A stretch of 63,840 bases of DNA, filler included, from Octopus bimaculoides (lineage: Eukaryota): the NCBI RefSeq assembly GCF_001194135.2. It is 5 parts of 5 records of this genome, joined end to end, with 100 filler letters (N's around TTAATTAATTAA, not from the genome) between each part and the next. Parts side by side here need not be neighbours in the genome. Positions count along the whole stretch, not along the records: positions 34,152 to 60,389 come from NC_068991.1; 4 more parts are not named here. One strand, written 5' to 3'. Shown piece after piece: positions 22,850-58,611 of this stretch (position 1 is the first letter of the stretch; each line of letters opens with the position of its first letter). Position numbers and translations under genes: made by a program. The notes below the pieces were generated by a model that saw only the letters and a list, made by a program, of their open reading frames with translations, had not been told where the DNA came from and searched no databases.

Positions 22850-23135
22850 CAGTAATTCCTCGACTATCGCGGGTGTTACGTTCCAAAATCCCCGGCGATA
22901 GGTGAAAATCCTCGAAGTAAAAACTGTACTATACTGTATATTTTTTGTATTTTTATAATTTGTATATATTTGTTTTATAAATGCAAAACAACACCACGGA
23001 AGAATCGAGGTAGGCTTAAATAATAAACCGCGATAGGTAAACCGCGATAGGTAAACCGCGATAGGTAAACCGCGATAGGTAAACCGCGATAGGTAAACCG
23101 CGATAGGTAAACCGCGATATGGTGAGAGATTACTG
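22850..23135. mobile_element. Tigger/pogo-like MITE with internal 14-bp tandem array
   Basis: TIRs CAGTAATTCCTCG..TATCGCGG / CCGCGATA..GAGAGATTACTG, TA on the left flank; AAACCGCGATAGGT x6 at 23025-23108. Confidence 0.7.
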
Positions 23136-36700: not shown

Positions 36701-37240
36701 TCTTCTTCTTTAGTGACATATATTTGTATCTCAATTGAATTTAGTTTACATTTTGGATCCCGCATTTTGAATAGAAATACCTACACAGTTTGTATGCCTA
36801 ATTTGAGCAATACTAATGTTAGTCATAGTATGGTCAGTGTGGCAGCACATCCAATGACAACAACCACCATACGCCACTGGAAGCCACGAGTAAAAATAAA
36901 TTCAGTTAAATTAAAGTAAAATGATATAAATTTTACATCTGTAAATTAATAAAATTTAAAACTTCCTTATTTTTGTCTCAGCAAAGATGAGGTGTTCTTG
37001 TACACTTTTAATACGCTCCTGGAAGTTCTTCTCTCTGTTTTTTTCTCTTTAGCAATATTTATACAAAATTAAATTTGCATAGGCGTAGTAGTGTAGTGAG
37101 AACCTTGCTTCCCGCGCATGCGCCGGTCTATTCGCTGTGTTGATTTTTGATGAGACGGACGGAATTCTTTGAGCTGTTGGCAGCAGTTTGTCGGTGAGTG
37201 TTGTACCGGTAGAAAGGAATGTATTCGGACCTAAGCTAGT

Positions 37241-38228
37241 ATGAGCCTTCCTCATTGGAGGAGGATCTCGTTAAGGTGGTAAATAGAATTGGACGAGCAT
37301 TTGGAAAGAGTAAAGAGTTTTGTTGAGGCTGCAGAGAAGAAGAAAAAGGAAGTGGACCTAATCGGATTGAAGGAGCTGTGTAAGATGACACAGAAGGTGG
37401 GCGGTGATGTAAATCTGTTACCCCCGAAAAGGGTTATGGTAAATATGGAAAAGAATACCATCACCTACAAGGTGTACGCAGTGGAGAAAAGGAAGGTGGA
37501 GCGGATGGAGATGGAAAAAGTAGAAAAAGCTCTGAAGGGGCTTTCAAAGGAAGTGACGTATATAGAAAAAGGAAATGGATATGGGACGGTGGATGTCCAG
37601 TTTAGGACAACGGAGGAGGCGAAAAGGCTGGCGAGCACAACTGTTAAAACGGAGGAACTAGTACTTCTACCCACGTACTTAGGAAGAAAGACTTCTAAGG
37701 TGAGGGTAGAAGAAATTCCACCCGATATAGAAGTGGCTTGGGTAGCGGCAGCCGTCCTCGTTGGAAGTGAGGAGGCGGTAGCTGTCCTCCAAGCCACAGA
37801 GACGGAGGAAGGTGGATTTAAAGGGAAAAAATAGGAAATTATCATACAAGCGGAGGCGAAACAGCTAGAAAATTTGGCGGAGACAGTGACGTTAGGAAAA
37901 ATAATATTGAGAGTATGGGTAGAGGGCAGAGCTTCATGTTGTTTTAAATGTGGCCAAAAGGGCCACATTAGAGCATACTGCCCTCTACAAAGGACAATGG
38001 TTGAGGATGCAGTTGTGGAGACGGAGGAGGAGAGAGAGAGAGGAAGAAAAGACAGACGGAGGAAAGGAGAAAAAGGAGGAAGAATGGAAAGCTACAGAAA
38101 GCAGAAGGAGAAAGAGGAAAAAACAGACACTGAGTATGATGTGGTACCCCAGTCCAACTCCAACCCACCCAAGACTACCCAGACCCACCCTCCCCATACA
38201 GACACCAAACCCACCCACCACATTTCCC
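37241..38228 (+). pseudogene. Tx1/L1-like ORF1 (RRM-like region + CCHC zinc knuckle), two in-frame stops, truncated by a gap
   Basis: ATG 37241, ORF 37289..37834 and ORF 37874.. share one frame, broken by TAA (37280-82) and TAG (37832-34); contains YGTVDVQFRTTEEAKRL and VWVEGRASCCFKCGQKGHIRAYCP (CX2CX4HX4C). Confidence 0.7.
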
Positions 38229-38634
38229 NNNNNNNNNNNNNNNNNNNNNNNNNNNNNNNNNNNNNNNNNNNNNNNNNNNNNNNNNNNNNNNNNNNNNNNN
38301 NNNNNNNNNNNNNNNNNNNNNNNNNNNNNNNNNNNNNNNNNNNNNNNNNNNNNNNNNNNNNNNNNNNNNNNNNNNNNNNNNNNNNNNNNNNNNNNNNNNN
38401 NNNNNNNNNNNNNNNNNNNNNNNNNNNNNNNNNNNNNNNNNNNNNNNNNNNNNNNNNNNNNNNNNNNNNNNNNNNNNNNNNNNNNNNNNNNNNNNNNNNN
38501 NNNNNNNNNNNNNNNNNNNNNNNNNNNNNNNNNNNNNNNNNNNNNNNNNNNNNNNNNNNNNNNNNNATGTGCTGTAGTGTCCCCCTCTGTGTAATGCCTT
38601 TGTGGCAATTTAAAAGAAATAAAGAAGTTTGCTT

Positions 38635-39030
38635 CCCAGCCATGTGATCTTATGTGTTCAGTCTCACTGCGCAGCACCTTGGGCAAGTGTCTTTCACTAG
38701 GCTCCACGCCGACCAAAGCCTTGTGAGTGGAAGGTAGCCAAAAGCTGAAAAAAAAAACAGACCGTCGTATCTCTCTCTCTCGCTCTTTCTTTTTTCTTTT
38801 TCTTTTTTTTTTCTTTCTTTTTCCTTTCTTTCTCAAATATGTGTGTGTGTTTGCCCTCCACCATCGCTTGGCAACTAATGCTGGTTTGTTTGCGGCCCCA
38901 TAACTTAGTGGTTCTTCAAAACGACAGAATATGTACAAGATATAACATTAAGTCAATTTGTTGGGCTAAACACTTCAAGGTGGAGCCCCCGCATGGCTGA
39001 AATTCAAAGGTTGAAACAAATAAAGGATAA
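38635..39030 (+). mobile_element. SINE family C, degenerate, with internal CT/T-rich tract
   Basis: gcagcaccttgggcaagtgtc...accaaagccttgtgagtgg...ggtggagcccccgcatggc. Confidence 0.65.
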
Positions 39031-43203: not shown

Positions 43204-44169
43204 TTAGAGTTTATAATATTGTTAAACAATGGTCTTATCAGTTATTGTGTTATTATTGTTGTTGTTTAGCCCTCGGTCACCCCTGATCAGGCAGCTTTGT
43301 ATGTGGTGAACCACGACATTCCATCTTTTTATTGTAATGAAAATAATTGAATCCTCATCGTTGAACGACAGTGATACACCACTACCATGTGTGTGTGTGT
43401 GTGTGTGCATGCGCGCGCGCTTATATTGTGCCTGTGTATTTGTGCGTGCATACCAGTTTCTCGGTGTGTGCATGCACACGCGCACGTCTGTAGGCCAAAC
43501 CGAATGGTTAAGATCGCTTCGCAATCATAATGACCTGGGTTCAATTCCGTTGAAAGCTATCTAAGGTAAGTACCTTTCGACTGAAGGTTCGTGAATGCAA
43601 TTGGTTTGACGGAAACTGTGTAGAAACTTGTTGGATGTATTGTAACAGTCTTATCAAACACTGTGCACCATGTCAGGCTCCTTCTGCACGGTAATAGCGT
43701 TAAACATACACATGTCTTTGGAATAGTCAGCCACTTACATTATAATTCAATAAGCAAGTAGTGCAGGTGATCAAACAACCAGAACACTCATCGTCGAAAC
43801 TAACGGAAGATCTTTTTAGTTTGTCTCTGTATGTTCATATTCTTTAAATAAGTTAACGTACTTGATCTATCTTAGTTTTAATTATTCCTGTTTGGAGGTA
43901 GTTTCCAATTTAATTTCCAGTTTTTGTTCTATCACGTCCCCTCCTCTTCCTCCCTCTACTCACACTGCTCTACTCTTTTTTGATATCCTTATACCCCTTT
44001 TAACTTTTCAGTTTCTTTATTTCCCGCTATACACACACACACACATAGAGAAAAAGGCATATTGAAAGATAGACACACAAACACAAACACACACACACAT
44101 AGATATATATTACGTCATATGTCAACAAACATAAGTTTGTTTTTGAAGCGTTGAAATGTATTGTAGAAC

Positions 44170-47412: not shown

Positions 47413-47647
47413 GACGGTGAGCTGGCAGAAATGTTAGCACCCCTGGCGAAATGCTTAGCGGTATTTCGTCTGCCATTACGTTCTGAATTCAAATTCCGCC
47501 GAGGTCGACTTAGCCTTTCATCCTTTTGGGGTCGATTAAATAAGTACCAGTTACGCACTGGGGTCGATGTAATCGACTTAATCCCTCTCTCTGTCCTTGC
47601 TTGTCTCTTCTATGTTTAGCCCCTTATGGGCAATAAAGAAATAAGAA
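47413..47647 (+). mobile_element. SINE family A, full length, 10-bp TSD
   Basis: GGAAGACAAA at 47403-47412 and 47648-47657. Confidence 0.9.
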
Positions 47648-48097
47648 GGAAGACAAATTTCACATCGGCGTGATATGACACAACTGAATCTGGATTACAT
47701 GACAAATGTTACACAAATATGAAGCTGCATTACTCACAGCTGAAGCACAGTAAAACTGAGGAATATTCCATTAGCTCATTCAAAATCTCCTGTAGGTGGA
47801 ACTTCGAAGAGAGGATGGATCACATTCAAAGATTAGTTCTTTTTCGTAGACGGTTATTTTTACATTAGTCTTAAGTTGACTGAATGACCAAATGTTGATT
47901 GATAATATAACTACAGGGCCATTATTTGGTGACGAGAGGAAGCAATAGCTGTCAGATCAAAGCCCCCTATCTTATTTTACTAACTCTTAACGAATGAAAG
48001 AAAGTCAGCCGTGATGAGATTTGATCTCTGAAAGTAAAGCGTTCTGAAAGGTGTTTTATCCGACACACTATCAATCATATTTTCCATTGCTTAAATA

Positions 48098-48983
48098 CGA
48101 GGTCTGATCAATATCCGGACTGTTGCCATAGTAACGAAGCTAAAGCACACAGAGTGAAGCCGCTTGGCACAGATTGACTTTGGAATCTGTTGTGCATGTA
48201 CACTAAGTCTGAACGTTCCAGCTCACTTTCATGTGTTTACAGCAGTGCTTGGAAGGAAAGTGTGTAGCGTGTGATCGTCGCATTGACCATGAGAAAGTTG
48301 TCATGACAATACCTGCTCAGAGGCCCATGCAAAGTTGCAGAAAGTGTATGGAAAGGAGTGTATGATCCGCATACAAGTGTACGAGTGACTCAGAGGTTTC
48401 CAAGATGACCAAAAAAATGTTGATATTGACGAAATTCTCGGAGATCCACGACCAGCAGAACTGAGAAAAAACATCGCAGATGTGCGTGCAGCTGTGAGGG
48501 GAAATCGTCGAATAACCATCCGTGAGTTATCAGAGAATGTGCAGATTAGTTACGGTTCAGTTCAGTCTATTATCACTGAAGATTTGGGTATAAGACGCGT
48601 GTCTGCCAAGTTTGTGCCAAAACTGCTTTCAGCTGACCAAAAAGATACTGGGGTTTCAGTTGCACAAGATTCCCTTGATTGTGACAAGAACGATGAAAAC
48701 CCTTTGAAACTTTGCATAAACCTTTGAGCAGTTACCACCGAGCTTTTTGGCAAAATTTGATGCATATTCTCTGGTGAACTTTCTCTGGCATGGTCAATAC
48801 GACGATCACACGCTACACACGTTACCTCCAAGCACTGCTGTAAACAGCGGAAGTAAGCTAGGCCATTAAGACTTAGTGCGCATGCACAACAGTTTAAGGT
48901 GAATCTGTATCAAGCGGCTTTACTCTGTGTGCCTTAGCTTTGTTACTATGACAACAGTCCGGATGCTTATTGATCAGGTCACC
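48098..48983. mobile_element. Mariner-derived element with two inverted 5' ends and a truncated transposase N-terminus
   Basis: TA-CGAGGTCTGATCAA TIR at 48096; 48725-48983 is the reverse complement of the first ~260 bp; internal peptide VRGNRRITIRELSENVQISYGSVQSIITEDLGIRRVSAKFVPKLLS (mariner HTH + WVP-like motif). Confidence 0.85.
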
Positions 48984-50151
48984 TATTTATTCATAAGGTA
49001 TGCACAAGAACACATATTTCGAGGGATGGACATAGTTGATTAAATTGACCCTAGTACAATGCTTGATTTTTTAAAAAAAGGAAGAAAAAATGATGATAAT
49101 GGGGAAAGAAACAAAGGAAAAAGACGATTTTAAACTGTGCCTTTAAACGTTCAAATGGTACTGCATGAGAGTAGGTTGAGAAGGAAGTCGAAAAAGAGGA
49201 AGGTGAGAAGGCGGTTGACAAGGAGGTCGAGAAGGAGCTTGAGGAGGAGCTCGAAGAGGAGTTTGAGAAGGAGGAGACAGCAGCAAGGACACTGGCTGTA
49301 CCAGTGGAGGAGAAAGATTTAGGCGGATAACAGCATGAGGGTGAAAAAGCGACACTATCCAAAATGGAGGAGGAGAAGGACAGAGAGAAGATACCAAGAG
49401 TAGAGCAAGGAAAAGGAAAACAATCAAGAAAGGCGAAAAAGTACAGATGGAATTTTGTAACATACGCTAAGAACACAGAAAGTGAGAGAAAAATAGTGAA
49501 ATTCAAATCCATTATAAAGGTGAAGTTACCCACAGATATCTATTCAGAAAATGTGAAGGCTATTGTAGTCGATAAGAAGAGATATAACAGGCTACAAGAA
49601 ATGTGTGGAAGCGGCATTGATCCGCCAGTAGTTGTGGTGGAATTGATGAATTGCCACCAGTGGTAGATTTAAAGGAACTAGAATCATTCATGAGATATTA
49701 AAAAAAGTAAGTAAAATGGTTTCATTAAAAAAGGGGGAAAAAACGATAATAGAAAAAAAAACAAAGGAAAAAAGATGATTTTAAACTGTGCATTCAAACG
49801 TTCAAATGGTACTGCATGAGAGTGGGGCTCATGAAAGCCATTTCATTTGCATTATTATATAACATCTTTTTCATTCACATTCGTTTTGTGTTTTTTGTCC
49901 CCACTGTAGTGTTCTGTCTGTCTTTGTGCTGTCCCCCTGTGTGAATAGCCGCAGTGCCAAAGTAAAGCGAGACTAGGCGTTAATTTTTGTCGTGTGTCGG
50001 TGTTTTCTGTTTTGATCTCTGTTAGACGTGAGTCACATTGTTAATTATTTTTTGAAGGTCACCCCTCGTGGGTGTACCTATGATTATTGATTGTTGAAAT
50101 TGCTGTTACTGTTGTTGAATTGTGTTTGTTTTCGTCCCATTTATAGGAGAC

Positions 50152-51022
50152 ATGGAGAAAGCGCCAGCGGGAAGCCACAGTTATGCGGCAGCAACTGGTA
50201 GAGGAGTAGACGTTGAAGCTTTGGAGGTTCGTGAGGAGAAAGATTTAGGCGGACAACAACATGAGGTTGAAAAAGCGACACTATCCAAAATGGGAGGAAA
50301 AGGACAGAGAAAAGGTACCAAGAGTAGAGCAAGGAAAAGGAAAACAAGCAAGAAAGGCGAAAAAGCACAGATGGAATTTTGTAACATACGCGAAGAACAC
50401 AGAAAGTGAGAAAAAATAATGAAGTTCAAATCCATTATAAGGATAGAGTTACCTACGGATATTTACTCGGAAAATGTGAAGGCTGTTGTTGTCGATGTGG
50501 AGGTGCAATGGCCCAGTGGTTAGGGCAGCGGACTCACGGTCGTAGGATCGCGGTTTCGATTCCCAGACCGGGTGTTGTGAGTGTTTATTGAGCGAAAACA
50601 CCTAAAGCTTCACGAGGCTCCGGCAGGGGAGGGGTGGCGAACCCTGCTTTACTCTTTCACCGTAACTTTCTCTCATTCTATCTTCCTGTTTCTGTTGTAC
50701 CTGTATTTCAAAGGGCCACCTTTGTCACACTGTGTTACGCTGAATATCCCCCGAGAACTACGTTAAGGGTACACGTGTCTGTGGAGTGCTCAGCCACTTA
50801 CACATTAATTTCACGAGCAGGCTGTTCCGTTGATCGGATCAACTGGAACCCTCGTCGTCGTAACCGACGGAGTGCCAACCAACCATTGTTGTCGATAAAG
50901 AGAGCTATAACAAGCTAAAAGAAGTGTGTGAAAGAGGCATTGATCTGCCAGGAGTTATGGTGGAATTTGATGAATTGCCGTCAGTGGTGGAGTTAAAGGA
51001 ACTAGAACTATTTATGAGATAG
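50152..51022 (+). pseudogene. Unrecognised ~157-codon K/E-rich ORF of the tandem unit, frameshifted and SINE-interrupted
   Basis: ATG 50152 to TAG 51020-22; paralogous copy at ~49176-49700; many synonymous differences between copies. Confidence 0.6.
50497..50885 (+). mobile_element. SINE family B, full length, 11-bp TSD, inserted in the ORF above
   Basis: TTGTTGTCGAT at 50486-50496 and 50886-50896; an empty-site equivalent exists at ~49560-49573. Confidence 0.92.
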
Positions 51023-52014
51023 TAAAAAACATAAAATTGTTTCATTAAAATAAAAAAAGGAAAAAAAAACGATGATAATGGAAAAAAAAAGAAAAGAAAA
51101 ATATAGATTATAAACTGTGCGCTTAAACGTTCAAATGGTACTGCATGAGAGTGGGGCTTATGCAGCGATTTCATTTTCAGTATTATATAACATTTTCATT
51201 TTCATTCGTTTTACGTTTTTTGTCCCCATTGCGGTGTTCTGTTTGTCCTTGTGCTGTCCCCTCTGTGTGAATGGCCGCAGTGCCAAAATAAAGAAAGAGG
51301 GAGCAGGCGTTAATCGCAGGAAGTCGTAAGGTGTCGCTTTGGTAGTTGTCGGAACATCGTTTGTTGGTTCGTGTATAGTTCGTGGAGAGTTTGTTGGATT
51401 GTTACGTTGTTGTTACTCTGATTCGTTATATATTTTATTGTCACCTCACGGTTATAGTATAAACAAATATCATCATAAATAGTGGCGATACTACAATAAT
51501 TGGCGACGAGTAACTACGTTATAATACATACACACATATGTATGTATGATGTATACTTATAAATACTAACCGTAAATGCTAATTCTGAAAAAGCCCTGAC
51601 CCTATATAAGACCATGATAAGATTCAGGTGATGTTCGAAACTATTACTTGGTCAGAACAGATCTGGGCCAATTGGTGTGAGCTTACGATTTTTGGGTGAG
51701 GGAGGAAGGCTGCTACACCCGACAAAAGAAAAAATGGAAACCTTTTCTTAAAAATAATTCGTTCAAGTTTTTATTTCATTCTTTTCTGTTACTTTTAAGT
51801 TCGTGATGTTCACAACAAGTACATGTATATAACTGTGGCCTGAAGTAGAGTTCACGATGAGGATTCAGTTGTTCGATCAATTGATTTACCTGCTCCTGAA
51901 TGAATGTGTAAGCGATTGAGCATTCCACGCACACATATCTTTAACGTAATTCTCAGTCAGAATCAGTATGACACAGAATGGTAAGGCTGTACTTTTTAAT
52001 GTACAGATATAACC

Positions 52015-52190
52015 CATACAAGGGTCTTCTATTCAGTTTCCCTCTACCAAATTTCCCTCACAATATATAGGTCGACCCGAGGCTATAGAAAATTAAATTT
52101 GCTCGAGTTGCCATGAAGCCTAAACGGAATCGAACGTGGAACTTCTGGTTGCGAAGAGAACTCTTTAATATTCGGTAATACTGCACCTAT
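52015..52190 (-). mobile_element. SINE family C, degenerate
   Basis: gggtcttctattcagtttccctctaccaaat...ggtcgacccgaggctatag. Confidence 0.55.
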
Positions 52191-52484
52191 TATATAACTA
52201 TAATACATACATAAGCCATATGCATTTGTAACTGATTATAGAAATACTTTATCAGCGCATTGAAATAGGGCTTACATTTTTCGTCTAGGCTCGGCGTAAT
52301 ATCAGATGTAATGATGCCTATATTTCACATCTAACTTGGATGTAATACCATTCGTAGTGAAATCCATATTTCACACCTGTCTTGGGCCTATGATTAGTTC
52401 TAATGGAGCTATATTTCCCATCTTTCTTGGGATTATTACCACTTGTATTTGAGCTCATATTTTACATCTGATCTGAATATATTA

Positions 52485-53506
52485 CACTGGTCAACAAAAT
52501 AAAACTTATTTTCTGGCATAAAATCTTAAAGCTGTTTTAGACTAATTTTGGGGGGCTGATCCCAAGACTGACCTCAGATTTGCTCTATCACATCATATTT
52601 TTGTGCCATAGGTATATACCTTTATTTAACTTTACACCACTATTTGCAGGAACTTTGGCTGGATTGTCATGCTAATTTTGAATATGTCTAAGCGAGTTTT
52701 GCTTTAGAACCCTTCCTTTTCTTTTCAGGTGTGAACTGAACCACTGTGTTCTCGTTATGGATACAACTTCAAAAAGAATGACGTGCTGTAATATTTGATG
52801 AACCTCAAATAAGAACACTCATCAGGGATTCACATTTTGTTACAACAATGTGTGCGGCGGAAGAATTTCCTTGAGGACAGGAAAGCTGACAACTATTAAG
52901 AGATTATGGAAGAGCTGCTCCTGAGTTTGCAAGCACTTGGATGTAGAATGAGCATTAAATTGCACTACTTACATAGTCACTTAGGTGAGTTTCCAGAGAA
53001 CCTGGGTAGTGTTAGCGAAGAACAAGGAATAAAAGTAATTGAAGCACGCTACCAAGGCCGATGGGACTTAAACATGGTGGCAAGTTATTGCTGGAGCTTG
53101 ATGGGAGACATTCCAGAAGCTGTGCACAAGAGATCATAAAAAAAGAGGAGTTCTTGCAGAAATAAAATGATCAGAATGAATGACCACAATGAATAGACAA
53201 TTTGTTTTCGTATTTTGATATAGCCAAGCATAATTCTTACATGCTAATGTGCATTTACCTACACAACTTTGTGTTTTGATTTATTAAATTGAAAATAAAA
53301 GACGGATTGTCTATTAAAAACTGCATCTACGTATATCTAATTCTTCATTTATGAGCATTAAATAGCTGTTTCTAGCAATATTAAAAGATTTTATAATCCA
53401 AAAATCTGAGGTGATAGACAAAATTTGATGAGAGAGTTGGATTCAGCACCCCAAAATTAGCTAAACCTTGATAAACCTTGTGCTAGAAAATGTGTATTGA
53501 CTAGTG
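52485..53506 (+). mobile_element. Internally deleted DNA transposon with DDE transposase C-terminal remnant (family uncertain, Tc1/mariner-related)
   Basis: Imperfect TIRs CACTGGTCAA...TTTTCTGGCA / TGCTAGAAAA...TTGACTAGTG with inverted subterminal ctaattttgggg / ccccaaaattag; ORF 52906..53139 CRMSIKLHYLHSHLGEFPENLGSVSEEQG..RYQGRW...YCWSL. Confidence 0.7.
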
Positions 53507-57409: not shown

Positions 57410-58611
57410 CTGGAGAGAAAATGTGAGAAGAATCAACTCGATTTCTTGACTGGCACCATATTTTCCGATTCCAGTACTTGACTAGTACTTTATTTATTGA
57501 CCACGTAGGGAATAAATGACAAAGTTGACCCCGGTGAGGTATGAACACAATTCAAAAAGCCAAGACTGAGTACTACAAAGCATCTATCTGATTCTTTAAC
57601 GATTTTGTTAAATGACTGCCTTAACTAAAATCGCTATTTCAACTAAAAGAAGTCCTGTGACGTTTTTGCGCGCGTTTCCTATGTTTTTTGTTTTGTTTTT
57701 CATGTATTTTGCCCGTAGAAAAATAGATTTGCATAAAAGAAGTTATGTTATATAAATGATTTGCGATTAAATATGTGAACGTCTAAATACAAAATATTGA
57801 AAAATCACGAGTAATTGGAGGCTGTGAAATAATTATATGCATTAATAATTGTATGTAATTAATGAAAAGTAAAACAATGAAAAATCTAACGAAGATGTGG
57901 AAAGTAGGCCTTACTCGTTGAATGTTTAATTGCTTGTGATAAAAATGGAATGATTCGAAGTGACATAACTGTCACAGAATACGTCCTTAATCTCTCGGCG
58001 TGAATAAATAACGGGAAAACATCTCACTCATTCTGCAACTGCTGGATATCATTAGTATACTATCTGATAGAGGTATCTCAAAGGAAGACGGCAATCTGTT
58101 ATTGATGGACACACACACACAAACTATTTCTCACACATGGTAGTAAAACTTCGTCGTTCGACGATGAGGATTCACTTGTTCGGTTAACTGGATTACCTGA
58201 TCCAGAATTAACCTGGTTAAGTATTCAATAGACATGCGTAACAACGTAATTCTCCGGCAGAATCAGCGTAACTGTGTGTGAAAAAGCTGTACCTTTGAAT
58301 TACAGGTACAATCCAACCGACAATTACATTACGAAAAACAGAGGAATGAATACAGTACTGTCCTTTTAATCAAGCACACTATCCAATCCGACAGTGTAAA
58401 ATACCTGTTCAATGTAAATATGCACTATAATACAGTAAATTCAACACTTTTTTTTATTATTTAAAATTAAACTTACCATTGATGGGGAAGAAGTGTGATA
58501 TGCTGTGATTTTGTCCGCTGTTTCCGAAATCCGTTAAAGGGAGGTCCGTTGTACCGAGGTATGAGTGTATATATACACACTCACACGCATACACCTAAAT
58601 GCATACAGATT

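What the first reader, a model, noticed from the sequence alone, without database searches (positions are those of the whole stretch)
49075..51310. Head-to-tail ~929-bp unit encoding an unrecognised small protein with signs of purifying selection
Seen: repeat-ORF-repeat-UTR-ORF-repeat organisation. After repairing single stops and frameshifts both ORF copies give one ~157+ aa K/E-rich protein (MEKAPAGSHSYAAAT...RWNFVTYAKNTESE...KFKSIIxxxLPTDIYSENVKAxVVD...DELPxVVxLKELExFMR*). In LPTDIYS five of seven codons differ synonymously (ccc/cct, aca/acg, atc/att, tat/tac, tca/tcg) and nearby replacements are mostly conservative (K/R, V/I, I/V, D/E). The 3' part has a stem-loop and AATAAA (copy 3). No RT, transposase or integrase is present. 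Established analogues: ORF1-only HAL1-type LINE derivatives and tandem-array TRIMs. Inference: a family of tiny protein-coding non-autonomous elements or a tandem orphan gene family; the two copies descend from lineages whose protein was under selection.
Basis: partly seen in the sequence, partly recalled or inferred. Interest (0 to 1): 0.75.

Follow-up and report, generated by a model that had tools for sequence, protein, structure and literature searches.

The report
Dead ORF1-only LINE copies in tandem
The repeat is real, but its "small protein" is the tail end of a larger RNA-binding ORF1 protein of an octopus LINE-type jumping gene that has lost its reverse transcriptase; the copies here are broken, so this is an interesting but fairly ordinary transposon relic.

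Summary
The head-to-tail repeat at 49034-51465 is real. Two units share about 680 bp at about 88% identity, 924-926 bp apart, with a third copy of the 3' piece. dN/dS between the two ORFs is 0.30 (p=0.0015).

The 157-aa "small protein" is not a gene product in its own right. Sixteen relatives, all from Octopus bimaculoides or O. sinensis, show it is the C-terminal domain of a roughly 340-390-aa protein: N-terminal region, CCHC zinc knuckle, E/K-rich linker, C-terminal domain. The domain models as a ferredoxin-like fold (pLDDT 84) with no known relative.

In O. sinensis a homologue sits 119 bp upstream of an endonuclease ORF, the normal LINE ORF1-ORF2 layout. Ten other copies end in a stop codon or a short 3' UTR with no ORF2. 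The last ~35-40 nt of that UTR scored against an abundant SINE's 3' tail match it (z 5-8). A sister copy at 37121-38628 splits another SINE and has a 16-bp target-site duplication.

So this is an ORF1-only, non-autonomous LINE derivative, like HAL1 or HeT-A. Every copy here is dead: one internal deletion, three frameshifts, one stop, one SINE insertion. Precise tail-to-head joins suggest reverse-transcriptase template jumping (inferred). An LTR/TRIM reading was tested and rejected.

The parts
49034..49172 (+). Unit 0 remnant: the last codons of ORF1, an A-rich stretch, and the first part of the 3' UTR. It breaks off inside the loop of the 3' UTR hairpin (...GCATGAGAGT).
   Evidence: Third copy of the 3' piece. 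BLASTN gives 86.7% identity to unit 2's 3' UTR over 105 nt. Similarity of 49034-49061 to the ORF end was read directly from the sequence.
49173..49701 (+). Unit 1 ORF1 remnant, truncated at its 5' side. It holds the E/K-rich linker (49184-49306), an in-frame TAA at 49328-49330, the C-terminal domain (49424-49698) with a -1 frameshift at about 49643, and the stop codon TAA at 49699-49701.
   Evidence: tblastn with P0001 residues 76-191 gives 75% identity, E 6e-56. The C-terminal-domain HMM gives E 1e-31.
49702..49976 (+). Unit 1 3' UTR. It holds an A/G-rich stretch, a two-tier stem-loop with a G-rich loop (about 49804-49843), and a terminal tail (49908-49976) shared with a SINE.
   Evidence: Fold. 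Tail alignment. Similarity to the SINE: z 5.2, 0 of 1000 shuffles.
49977..50142 (+). Unit 2 5' UTR (leader). It is joined directly to unit 1's tail (GACTAGG|CGTTAAT) and ends in a degenerate hairpin just before the ATG.
   Evidence: Homologous to the leader of O. sinensis unit b (L002 7443-7581): z 5.0, 0 of 300 shuffles.
50143..50496 (+). Unit 2 ORF1, 5' part. The ATG is at 50143 and 28 N-terminal residues are kept. An internal deletion junction lies at about 50226-50233. Frameshifts are at 50293 (-2) and 50412 (-1).
   Evidence: P0010 residues 1-28 match at 71% identity. Alignment to unit 1 is.
50497..50884 (+). SINE-like insertion that interrupts unit 2's C-terminal domain. The target-site duplication is at 50485-50496 and 50885-50896.
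   Evidence: Direct repeat read. Related fragments occur elsewhere in the piece and in O. sinensis. ARAGORN calls no tRNA.
50885..51022 (+). Unit 2 ORF1, 3' part (end of the C-terminal domain). Stop codon TAG at 51020-51022.
   Evidence: The C-terminal-domain HMM gives E 2e-18. tblastn hits are.
51023..51307 (+). Unit 2 3' UTR. It holds the stem-loop (about 51133-51176), the SINE-shared tail (51234-51307) and AATAAA at 51287-51292.
   Evidence: Similarity to the SINE: z 7.3, 0 of 1000 shuffles.
51308..51465 (+). Unit 3 remnant: leader only, joined directly to unit 2's tail (GCAGG|CGTTAAT). The ORF is missing.
   Evidence: Homologous to the O. sinensis leader: z 4.7. No family protein match lies downstream.
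37121..38628 (+). Sister copy in the same piece, from a different subfamily. It holds the leader, an ORF1 with the N-terminal domain and the CCHC knuckle, an assembly gap (38230-38566) and the tail. It is inserted in a SINE with target-site duplication TTGCTTCCCGCGCATG (37105-37120) / TTGCTTCCCAGCCATG (38629-38644).
   Evidence: tblastn with P0003 residues 5-148 gives E 2e-31. The zf-CCHC hit (19.1 bits) is below Pfam's cut-off of 20.8. The flanks rebuild one SINE. The upstream flank matches the SINE head at z 5.7.
47592..47645 (+). 3' tail of a tRNA-type SINE copy that carries the same terminal motif as the units (TGTCCTTG.TTGTC.C.TCTATGTTTAGCCCC...AATAAAGAAATA).

Best explanation
Window 49034-51465 is a decayed head-to-tail array of an Octopus-restricted, ORF1-only non-LTR retrotransposon, a 'half-LINE'. 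It holds two near-complete units and two stubs.

An intact unit (about 1.5-1.7 kb) would consist of:
- a ~165-nt leader;
- one ORF for a roughly 340-390-aa ORF1-type protein: N-terminal region (possibly RRM-like), one CCHC zinc knuckle, an E/K-rich linker, and an ~87-aa ferredoxin-like C-terminal domain;
- a ~285-nt 3' UTR with a conserved stem-loop and a terminal tail.

Proposed mechanism:
1. The RNA is translated and its ORF1 protein binds it.
2. The endonuclease/reverse transcriptase of an autonomous LINE that recognises the same tail reverse-transcribes the RNA at a nicked target. The same enzyme would move the abundant SINE that carries this tail.
3. This produces target-site duplications and 5' truncations.
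4. When the enzyme reaches the 5' end of one RNA it can jump to the 3' end of another. That gives precise tail-to-head joins without poly(A) or flanking DNA.

Shown here:
- homology and domain order of the protein;
- absence of ORF2 in the units;
- LINE context of a homologue;
- the shared SINE tail;
- one target-site duplication;
- precise junctions;
- purifying selection in the past;
- present-day inactivation of all copies in the window.

Inferred, not shown:
- RNA binding by the protein;
- trans-mobilisation by a partner LINE;
- template jumping as the origin of the tandems.
For: 1. Protein family. An exhaustive HMMER search found 15 proteins and a profile search added one. All 16 are from O. 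bimaculoides or O. sinensis. Longer members (P0003, P0005, P0006, P0008, P0015) place the window's domain after a CCHC knuckle and an E/K linker. zf-CCHC is above Pfam's cut-off in P0003, P0005 and P0006.

2. LINE context. In O. sinensis locus L002 a homologous ORF1 (tblastn with P0003, E 6e-25) ends at 22917. An Exo_endo_phos ORF (E 2e-12) starts at 23036 on the same strand.

3. No ORF2 in ten other copies. Seven units carry the ORF1 stop codon followed by a homologous short 3' UTR (176-317 bp where it is uninterrupted): window u1 and u2; L001; L002 a, b and c; L003 X1. Stub u0 shows the ORF end and the first part of the 3' UTR. The copy at 37121-38628 has its tail right after an assembly gap. 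X2 is cut inside ORF1.

4. SINE tail. The end of that UTR matches the 3' tail of a tRNA-type SINE at z 5.2-8.4, with 0 of 1000 shuffles reaching the score, for five of six units. Twelve alignment columns are invariant.

5. Integration type. The sister copy at 37121-38628 splits a SINE and has a 16-bp target-site duplication, no LTR and no poly(A). Copies L002 a, L001 and L003 X1 are 5'-truncated.

6. Recurring tandems. Precise tail-to-leader joins recur at three other junctions: window u2/u3, L003 X1/X2 and L002 b/c.

7. Selection. dN/dS between u1 and u2 is 0.30, p 0.0015. Seven deeper pairs give pN/pS 0.24-0.52, all p <= 0.0012.

8. Fold. The C-terminal domain models as beta-alpha-beta-beta-alpha-beta with pLDDT 83.6.
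Against: - The autonomous partner with this exact tail was not found. The one LINE seen (L002 d) runs off the end of the locus before its 3' end.
- The C-terminal region of that LINE's ORF1 matches the family profile only weakly (domain E 0.18).
- RRM identity of the N-terminal domain is not shown. The RRM_3 hit has E 0.018, below the cut-off, and the structure model failed (pLDDT 38).
- Only one clean target-site duplication was found. None was found for the arrays.
- Two arrays end in a 3'-truncated unit (window u3, L003 X2). Simple template jumping does not predict this, so later deletion must be assumed.
- The protein-guided alignments bias pN downwards.
Confidence: 0.75

Rival explanations
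1. A tandemly duplicated host gene family, either a domesticated ORF1-like 'orphan' gene or an L1TD1-type exaptation. The copies in the window would simply be pseudogenised members.
For: - dN/dS is below 1 in all pairs.
- Relatives are annotated as genes in two Octopus species.
- Tandem arrangement is seen at four loci.
Against: - One copy is inserted in a SINE with a target-site duplication.
- 5'-truncated copies abut unrelated DNA.
- The 3' tail is shared with a SINE.
- Unit-to-unit joins are exact RNA-end to RNA-end, with no intergenic DNA.
- Every genomic copy examined has stops, frameshifts, deletions or SINE insertions.
- Several gene models are chimeras or use a SINE as an 'intron' (P0007; P0006).
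Confidence: 0.1
2. An LTR-type non-autonomous element (TRIM/LARD-like, or an accessory ORF of a Gypsy element). The spacer between ORFs (3' UTR plus leader) would be an LTR shared by neighbouring units.
For: - In O. sinensis L002, units a, b and c abut a Gypsy gag-pol that has a tRNA-Ser-type primer-binding site and a polypurine tract.
- The 10-mer TGGCGACGAG also occurs after the window's third spacer, at 51501.
- A purine run follows the window's stop codons.
Against: - The Gypsy LTR, defined from a second copy in L003, matches L002 7347-7403 (z 12.3) and the 100 bp after units a and c (z 4.3 and 5.2). It does not match the window's tail plus leader (z -1.0 and -2.1), the L003 junction or the SINE tail. 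In L002 the units are therefore nested in or abutting Gypsy LTRs.
- About 0.07 shared 10-mers are expected by chance between the two stretches compared.
- The purine run is absent from L002 a, b and c.
- No PBS lies between leader and ATG.
- The copy at 37121-38628 has a 16-bp target-site duplication and no LTR.
Confidence: 0.04
3. One reading: a family of roughly 930-bp elements whose product is the 157-aa protein itself.
For: After repair, unit 2 reads as one 156-aa ORF starting at a proper ATG behind a full leader.
Against: - The join of residue 28 to EEKDLGG is seen only in unit 2.
- Unit 1 and P0001 keep the E/K linker. P0010 keeps the whole N-terminal domain behind the same first 28 residues.
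- No second copy with this deletion was found among 16 proteins and four loci.
Confidence: 0.04

Closest known systems
HAL1 (half-L1) of mammals
   Same: A non-autonomous LINE derivative that keeps only ORF1 and lacks ORF2, and that arose and persisted as its own lineage (PMC5753468, which cites Smit 1999 and Bao & Jurka 2010). The ORF1 here likewise shows purifying selection across subfamilies.
   Different: - It is not an L1 derivative. There is no poly(A) tail and the 3' end is a specific tail shared with a SINE.
- ORF1 has a CCHC knuckle plus an unrelated C-terminal domain, not the coiled-coil/RRM/CTD arrangement of mammalian L1.
- Head-to-tail joins are frequent.
HeT-A, telomeric retrotransposon of Drosophila
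   Same: A non-LTR element that encodes only a Gag/ORF1-type protein with zinc knuckles, depends on RT supplied in trans, and lies in head-to-tail arrays where one element's 3' end abuts the next element's 5' UTR (PMC5537684).
   Different: - There is no evidence of telomeric location.
- There is no poly(A).
- A promoter in the 3' end was not tested here. Only an AATAAAG motif 15-20 nt before the next unit's first base was seen.
- Arrays are short (2-3 units) and decayed.
SINE/LINE pairs with a common 3' tail (stringent-type LINEs such as the L2, CR1 and RTE clades)
   Same: The units and an abundant tRNA-type SINE share the terminal tail, and both end without poly(A). This is the hallmark of recognition by one partner reverse transcriptase (principle from Ohshima & Okada 2005, cited in PMC9115989).
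   Different: The tail-sharing passenger here is protein-coding (ORF1). The partner LINE and its clade were not identified. The octopus LINEs described as potentially active are RTE and Dong (PMC9115989), and neither is expected to have this ORF1; that expectation rests on my own knowledge.
TRIM/LARD non-autonomous LTR elements in tandem arrays
   Same: A repeat-ORF-repeat-ORF-repeat appearance.
   Different: No LTR pair, PBS or PPT. The integration signature is target-primed reverse transcription.

Membership tests
LINE ORF1 protein (non-LTR retrotransposon) | It is encoded immediately upstream of an ORF2 with endonuclease/RT in the autonomous element. | tested here: met
   In L002 d, ORF1 (homologous to P0003, E 6e-25) ends at 22917 and an Exo_endo_phos ORF starts at 23036 on the same strand. 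This was met for a homologue, not for the window's own subfamily. The RT part lies beyond the end of the locus.
LINE ORF1 protein (non-LTR retrotransposon) | Nucleic-acid-binding modules: CCHC zinc knuckle and/or RRM. | tested here: inconclusive
   zf-CCHC is above Pfam's cut-off in P0003, P0005 and P0006. RRM_3 reaches only E 0.018, below the cut-off, and the N-domain model failed (pLDDT 38). The window's units u1 and u2 have lost this part.
Non-LTR retrotransposon (target-primed reverse transcription) | Variable-length target-site duplication, 5' truncation, and no LTRs. | tested here: met
   A 16-bp duplication flanks 37121-38628 inside a SINE. 5'-truncated copies are seen. No duplication was found around the arrays themselves.
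ORF1-only LINE derivative (HAL1-like) | The ORF1 stop is followed directly by the element's 3' UTR and end, with no ORF2. | tested here: met
   Stop codons are at 49699 and 51020, and the tail ends 275-285 bp later. The same layout holds in L001, L002 a, b and c, and L003 X1.
ORF1-only LINE derivative (HAL1-like) | Descent from the L1 clade, with a poly(A) 3' end. | tested here: not met
   No poly(A) is present at any 3' end, and a specific tail is shared with a SINE. It works like HAL1 but is not a HAL1 member.
HeT-A-type 'promoting in tandem' element | A promoter in the 3' UTR drives the downstream unit; location is telomeric. | not testable with these tools
   Only the motif position (AATAAAG 15-20 nt upstream of the next leader) is seen.
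SINE/LINE partnership | The 3' tail is shared with the partner LINE's 3' end. | tested here: inconclusive
   Sharing between the units and the SINE is shown (z 5-8). The autonomous LINE with this tail was not available.
LTR retrotransposon / TRIM | Direct LTR pair (TG...CA), PBS after the 5' LTR, PPT before the 3' LTR, and a 4-6-bp target-site duplication. | tested here: not met
   There is no similarity between the real Gypsy LTR and the window spacers. No PBS lies between leader and ATG. The purine run is not conserved.
Penelope-like element / retrozyme | Hammerhead ribozyme in the repeat, or a GIY-YIG/RT ORF. | tested here: not met
   Rfam returned no match up to E = 1 in 48000-52500, and no RT ORF is present.

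The most novel reading that the evidence does not exclude
The ORF1-only lineage is a self-sustaining 'gag-only' retroelement older than the split of O. bimaculoides and O. sinensis, and its tail-to-head joins are functional rather than accidental. The 3' tail of one unit carries an AATAAAG motif 15-20 nt before the next unit's first base. On this reading it would act as the promoter for the downstream unit, as in Drosophila HeT-A. That would be a non-telomeric, molluscan case of 'promoting in tandem', an LTR-like intermediate. A subset of intact copies might also serve the host.
Probability: 0.12. Interest if true: 0.7.

Novelty: new member of a known kind. Interest (0 to 1): 0.38.

Why it matters
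1. Annotation. It explains a set of 'uncharacterized' or 'CCHC-type domain-containing' proteins in Octopus proteomes as transposon ORF1 fragments. Some sit in chimeric gene models (an RGS-domain model and one the source names a MIB/HERC2 domain-containing protein), which is useful for cleaning annotation.

2. Transposon biology. It gives an invertebrate, non-L1 parallel to mammalian HAL1 and Drosophila HeT-A. The RT-less element keeps its own ORF1 under purifying selection through several diverged subfamilies. That bears on whether ORF1 protein made in cis helps a non-autonomous RNA compete for a partner's reverse transcriptase.

3. Mechanism. The exact tail-to-head joins are natural records of a reverse-transcriptase end-to-end join in a genome where SINEs and LINEs are very abundant.

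4. Protein domain. The ~87-aa C-terminal domain has no Pfam, PDB-sequence or significant fold match.

None of this changes a major concept. The copies in this window are dead.

Tried and rejected
- Sequence databases. Pfam and PDB sequence searches found nothing for the C-terminal domain beyond a chance-level TPR hit (E 0.026).
- RNA families. Rfam returned no match up to E = 1, so there is no hammerhead or Penelope-like signature. ARAGORN found no tRNA.
- Fold search. Foldseek against the PDB gave only generic ferredoxin-like matches, best E 0.05.
- Internal duplication. Testing whether the C-terminal domain is a duplicate of the N-terminal domain with hhalign gave probability 0.4%. Rejected.
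- N-terminal model. The structure prediction failed (pLDDT 38).
- LTR hypothesis. I pursued it for some time. The PBS and PPT in L002 belong to a Gypsy element into whose LTRs the units are nested or against which they abut. The window's TGGCGACGAG is best read as chance.
- A second unit's tail upstream of the copy at 37121. Not significant (z 1.0).
- Small hairpin in the terminal tail. RNAalifold predicted no pairs. I then worked out column registers by hand for that hairpin and for the pre-ATG hairpin. They differ between rows of alignments A7-A9, so a formal pair count was not meaningful and only the per-sequence folds are reported.
- Target-site duplications around the arrays. None found.
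- Word-seeded protein searches. They were swamped by the E/K low-complexity region and added little.
- Exact-protein look-ups. P0001, P0003 and the window's 100-aa ORF returned nothing.
Full report
**1. What is in the sequence**

The piece is AT-rich (about 35-45% G+C) and full of microsatellites and SINE fragments.

Between 49034 and 51465 there is a same-strand, head-to-tail repeat:
- The 28-mer AAACGTTCAAATGGTACTGCATGAGAGT occurs exactly three times (49145, 49796, 51125), against 0 expected.
- A gapped local alignment shows 49307-49984 collinear with 50233-51314 at about 88% identity.
- Spacing is 924-926 bp up to 50484 and 1323-1330 bp afterwards.
- The difference comes from a ~390-bp insertion (50497-50884) flanked by GTTGTTGTCGAT / ATTGTTGTCGAT.

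I call the parts:
- u0: 49034-49172, a stub;
- u1: 49173-49976;
- u2: 49977-51307;
- u3: 51308 to about 51465, leader only.

- The five synonymous differences in LPTDIYS are as stated.
- AATAAA is at 51287-51292.
- A stem-loop is present in each 3' part.
- No RT, transposase or integrase lies inside the interval.

**2. Selection**

Over the 126 codons shared by u1 and u2 there are 16 synonymous and 22 non-synonymous differences.
- dS is 0.25 and dN is 0.076, so dN/dS is 0.305.
- The excess of synonymous changes has binomial p 0.0015.
- The two wrong frames give 0.57 and 1.1.

Both copies are nevertheless dead:
- u1 has an in-frame TAA (49328) and a -1 frameshift (about 49643), and its 5' part is missing.
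- u2 has -2 and -1 frameshifts (50293, 50412), the SINE insertion and an internal deletion.

The selection signal therefore dates from before inactivation.

Seven deeper pairs among copies from four loci have saturated synonymous sites and pN/pS of 0.24-0.52, all with p <= 0.0012. One caveat applies: those alignments were guided by protein similarity, which lowers pN.

**3. What the protein is**

The repaired 156-aa sequence hits nothing in Pfam and only a chance-level match in PDB sequences.

It does have relatives:
- One word-seeded search found P0001, at 78% identity.
- An exhaustive HMMER scan of 1.84 billion representative proteins found 15 proteins.
- A profile search added P0016.
- All 16 are from Octopus bimaculoides or O. 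sinensis.

The longer members (P0003 at 386 aa, P0005, P0006, P0008, P0015) show the true architecture. It runs N-terminal region, CCHC knuckle, E/K-rich linker, then the domain found in the window, followed by a stop. zf-CCHC is above Pfam's cut-off in three of them.

P0010 begins MEQVPVKNRSYAVATGRGVDSEALEVRE and continues into the N-terminal domain. In u2 the same 28 residues are fused directly to EEKDLGG. So u2 carries a deletion of about 185 codons. u1 keeps the E/K linker (49184-49306, in frame) that u2 lacks. The '157-aa protein' and the '929-bp unit' are thus products of one deletion and not a family.

The C-terminal ~87 residues model confidently as beta-alpha-beta-beta-alpha-beta (pLDDT 83.6, pTM 0.70). 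Foldseek against the PDB gives only generic ferredoxin-like matches, best E 0.05.

A model of the N-terminal domain failed (pLDDT 38). 'RRM-like' therefore rests only on a sub-threshold RRM_3 hit (E 0.018).

**4. It is a LINE ORF1, and these copies lack ORF2**

Four further lines of evidence come from the same piece and from three fetched loci. The loci are L001 and L002 from O. sinensis and L003 from O. bimaculoides.

(a) LINE layout. In L002 a homologous ORF1 (tblastn with P0003, E 6e-25) ends at 22917. An Exo_endo_phos ORF (E 2e-12) begins at 23036 on the same strand. That is the normal LINE ORF1-ORF2 layout. Its C-terminal region matches the family profile only weakly (domain E 0.18).

(b) No ORF2 in the other ten copies.
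- In seven units the ORF1 stop is followed by a homologous short 3' UTR and then the end of the element. These are u1, u2, L001, L002 a, b and c, and L003 X1. The UTR is 176-317 bp where it is uninterrupted; in L001 a SINE is inserted in it.
- Stub u0 shows the ORF end and the first part of the 3' UTR.
- The copy at 37121-38628 has its tail right after an assembly gap.
- X2 is cut inside ORF1.
- Sources.

(c) Shared SINE tail. The terminal part of that UTR resembles the 3' tail of a tRNA-type SINE present in all loci.
- The motif is TGTCTGTCCTTGT..TGTCCCCTCT.TG...AA.AAAG....
- The locally aligned core is about 35-40 nt.
- Similarity reaches z 5.2-8.4 with 0 of 1000 dinucleotide shuffles for five of six units.
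- The SINE copy in L001 ends ...AAAGAAATAG, without poly(A), next to a 16-bp target-site duplication.

(d) Integration signature. A sister copy in the window (37121-38628) has the N-terminal domain and the CCHC motif, with P0003 residues 5-148 matching at E 2e-31.
- It splits another SINE.
- The upstream flank is the SINE head (z 5.7).
- The downstream flank continues the same SINE from about position 34.
- The overlap is a 16-bp target-site duplication (14 of 16 bases identical).
- There is no LTR and no poly(A).
- Other copies are 5'-truncated against unrelated DNA.

Together these observations place the family as an ORF1-only, non-autonomous derivative of a stringent-type LINE.

**5. The tandem arrangement**

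The unit-to-unit joins are exact:
- u1/u2: ...GACTAGG|CGTTAAT...
- u2/u3: ...GCAGG|CGTTAAT...
- L003 X1/X2: ...TTACAGT|CGGCGAGG...

None contains poly(A) or foreign DNA. In L002 b/c, unit b's tail is followed within about 20 nt by unit c's ATG, so c is 5'-truncated at the join.

The 5' end of the solitary copy, as defined by its target-site duplication (CGCCGG...), aligns close to these junctions. The joins therefore look like RNA 3' end to RNA 5' end. An end-to-end template jump by a reverse transcriptase would produce exactly that, whereas DNA-level duplication of one insertion would carry flanking DNA along. This step is inferred.

Two things do not fit neatly:
- u3 and L003 X2 are cut off at their 3' side.
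- u0 is joined to u1 in the loop of u0's 3' UTR hairpin.

Later deletions have to be assumed for both.

**6. RNA features**

The 3' UTR stem-loop is kept in all units, but with different helix sequences:
- CAUGAG/CUCAUG in the window;
- CUAC/GUAG in L002 a and b;
- UAUGUG/CAUAUG in L002 c;
- GCAUGUG/CGCAUGC in L003.

The loop is always G-rich.

A pyrimidine/purine hairpin sits just before, or around, the ATG:
- L002 b: z -3.2;
- the autonomous-type copy L002 d: z -5.0;
- L003 X2: present;
- the window's own copies: weak.

The helix registers, worked out by hand, differ between rows of the MAFFT alignments. Formal pair counts were therefore not meaningful and were not run. These RNA features count as observations and were not statistically tested.

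**7. The LTR idea, tested and dropped**

In L002, units a, b and c lie around a Gypsy gag-pol (DUF7083, protease, RVT_1, RNase H, integrase). That element has a primer-binding site complementary to the 3' end of tRNA-Ser(GCU), as I recall that tRNA's sequence, and a polypurine tract. The window has the same 10-mer at 51501.

A second copy of that Gypsy LTR, in L003, settles the matter:
- It matches L002 7347-7403 (z 12.3).
- It matches the 100 bp after units a and c (z 4.3 and 5.2).
- It does not match the window's tail plus leader (z -1.0 and -2.1), the L003 junction or the SINE tail.

So in L002 the b-c pair sits inside the Gypsy's 3' LTR and unit a abuts its 5' LTR. The window's 10-mer is best explained by chance, since about 0.07 shared 10-mers are expected between the stretches compared.

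**8. Comparison with known elements, and verdict**

- HAL1 of mammals is the closest functional analogue: an ORF1-only LINE derivative that arose independently several times in mammals (PMC5753468). This family is not L1-derived, has no poly(A), and has a different ORF1.
- HeT-A of Drosophila is the closest analogue for the combination of gag-only coding and head-to-tail arrays in which a 3' end abuts the next 5' UTR (PMC5537684). Telomeric location and a 3' promoter were not testable here.
- Published work on octopus LINEs describes RTE and Dong elements (PMC9115989). The passages retrieved from that paper do not mention this family.

I rate it a new member of a known kind. It is of moderate interest to transposon specialists and useful for annotation, but the copies in this window are inactive relics.

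Noticed in passing
window 48092-48989: An element of about 900 bp lies directly upstream of the array. It has long, imperfect terminal inverted repeats (48092-48291 against 48789-48989, 80-93% complementary). It holds an 81-aa ORF (48482-48727) with only sub-threshold helix-turn-helix hits. It looks like an internally deleted mariner-type DNA transposon.
   Followed up: partly
window 50497-50884: A SINE-like element is inserted in unit 2's coding region with a 12-bp target-site duplication. Fragments of the same family lie at 51854-51954 (-), 58214-58311 (-) and 43698-43807 (+), and in O. sinensis L001 at 91-94% identity.
   Followed up: partly
L002 3124-7403 and 10663-10762: A degenerate Ty3/Gypsy element has a primer-binding site of tRNA-Ser(GCU) type and a polypurine tract. 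The ORF1-only units b and c sit between the 5' and 3' parts of its 3' LTR, and unit a abuts its 5' LTR. It is unresolved why both LTRs are hit at nearly the same position. Possibilities are target preference, an LTR that carried the insert through replication, or recombination.
   Followed up: partly
L002 21170-24620: A LINE of autonomous type: a leader with a strong hairpin before the ATG (z -5.0), an ORF1 with a CCHC knuckle, then an APE-type endonuclease ORF. The RT and the 3' end lie beyond the locus, so its clade and tail are unknown.
   Followed up: partly
L003 31990-34022: A second O. bimaculoides locus has the same tail-to-leader join between a 5'-truncated unit and a 3'-truncated unit. 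Here the ATG lies inside the loop of the conserved leader hairpin.
   Followed up: partly
proteins P0007, P0012, P0006: Public gene models fuse ORF1 fragments to host domains: an RGS domain in P0007, and a model the source names a MIB/HERC2 domain-containing protein in P0012. P0006 splices out a SINE as an 'intron'. These are likely annotation artefacts, or possibly exonisation.
   Followed up: no
window 38230-38566: An assembly gap (a run of N) lies inside the sister copy at 37121-38628. It hides that copy's linker, C-terminal domain and most of its 3' UTR. That this copy lacks ORF2 therefore rests on the stated gap size.
   Followed up: no
window 49702-49783, 51023-51105; L001 11005-11104; L003 33147-33260: A long A/G-rich stretch follows the ORF1 stop codon in one group of subfamilies but not in L002 a, b and c. 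It may mark the old ORF2-deletion junction or a remnant of an internal poly(A)-like tract.
   Followed up: no
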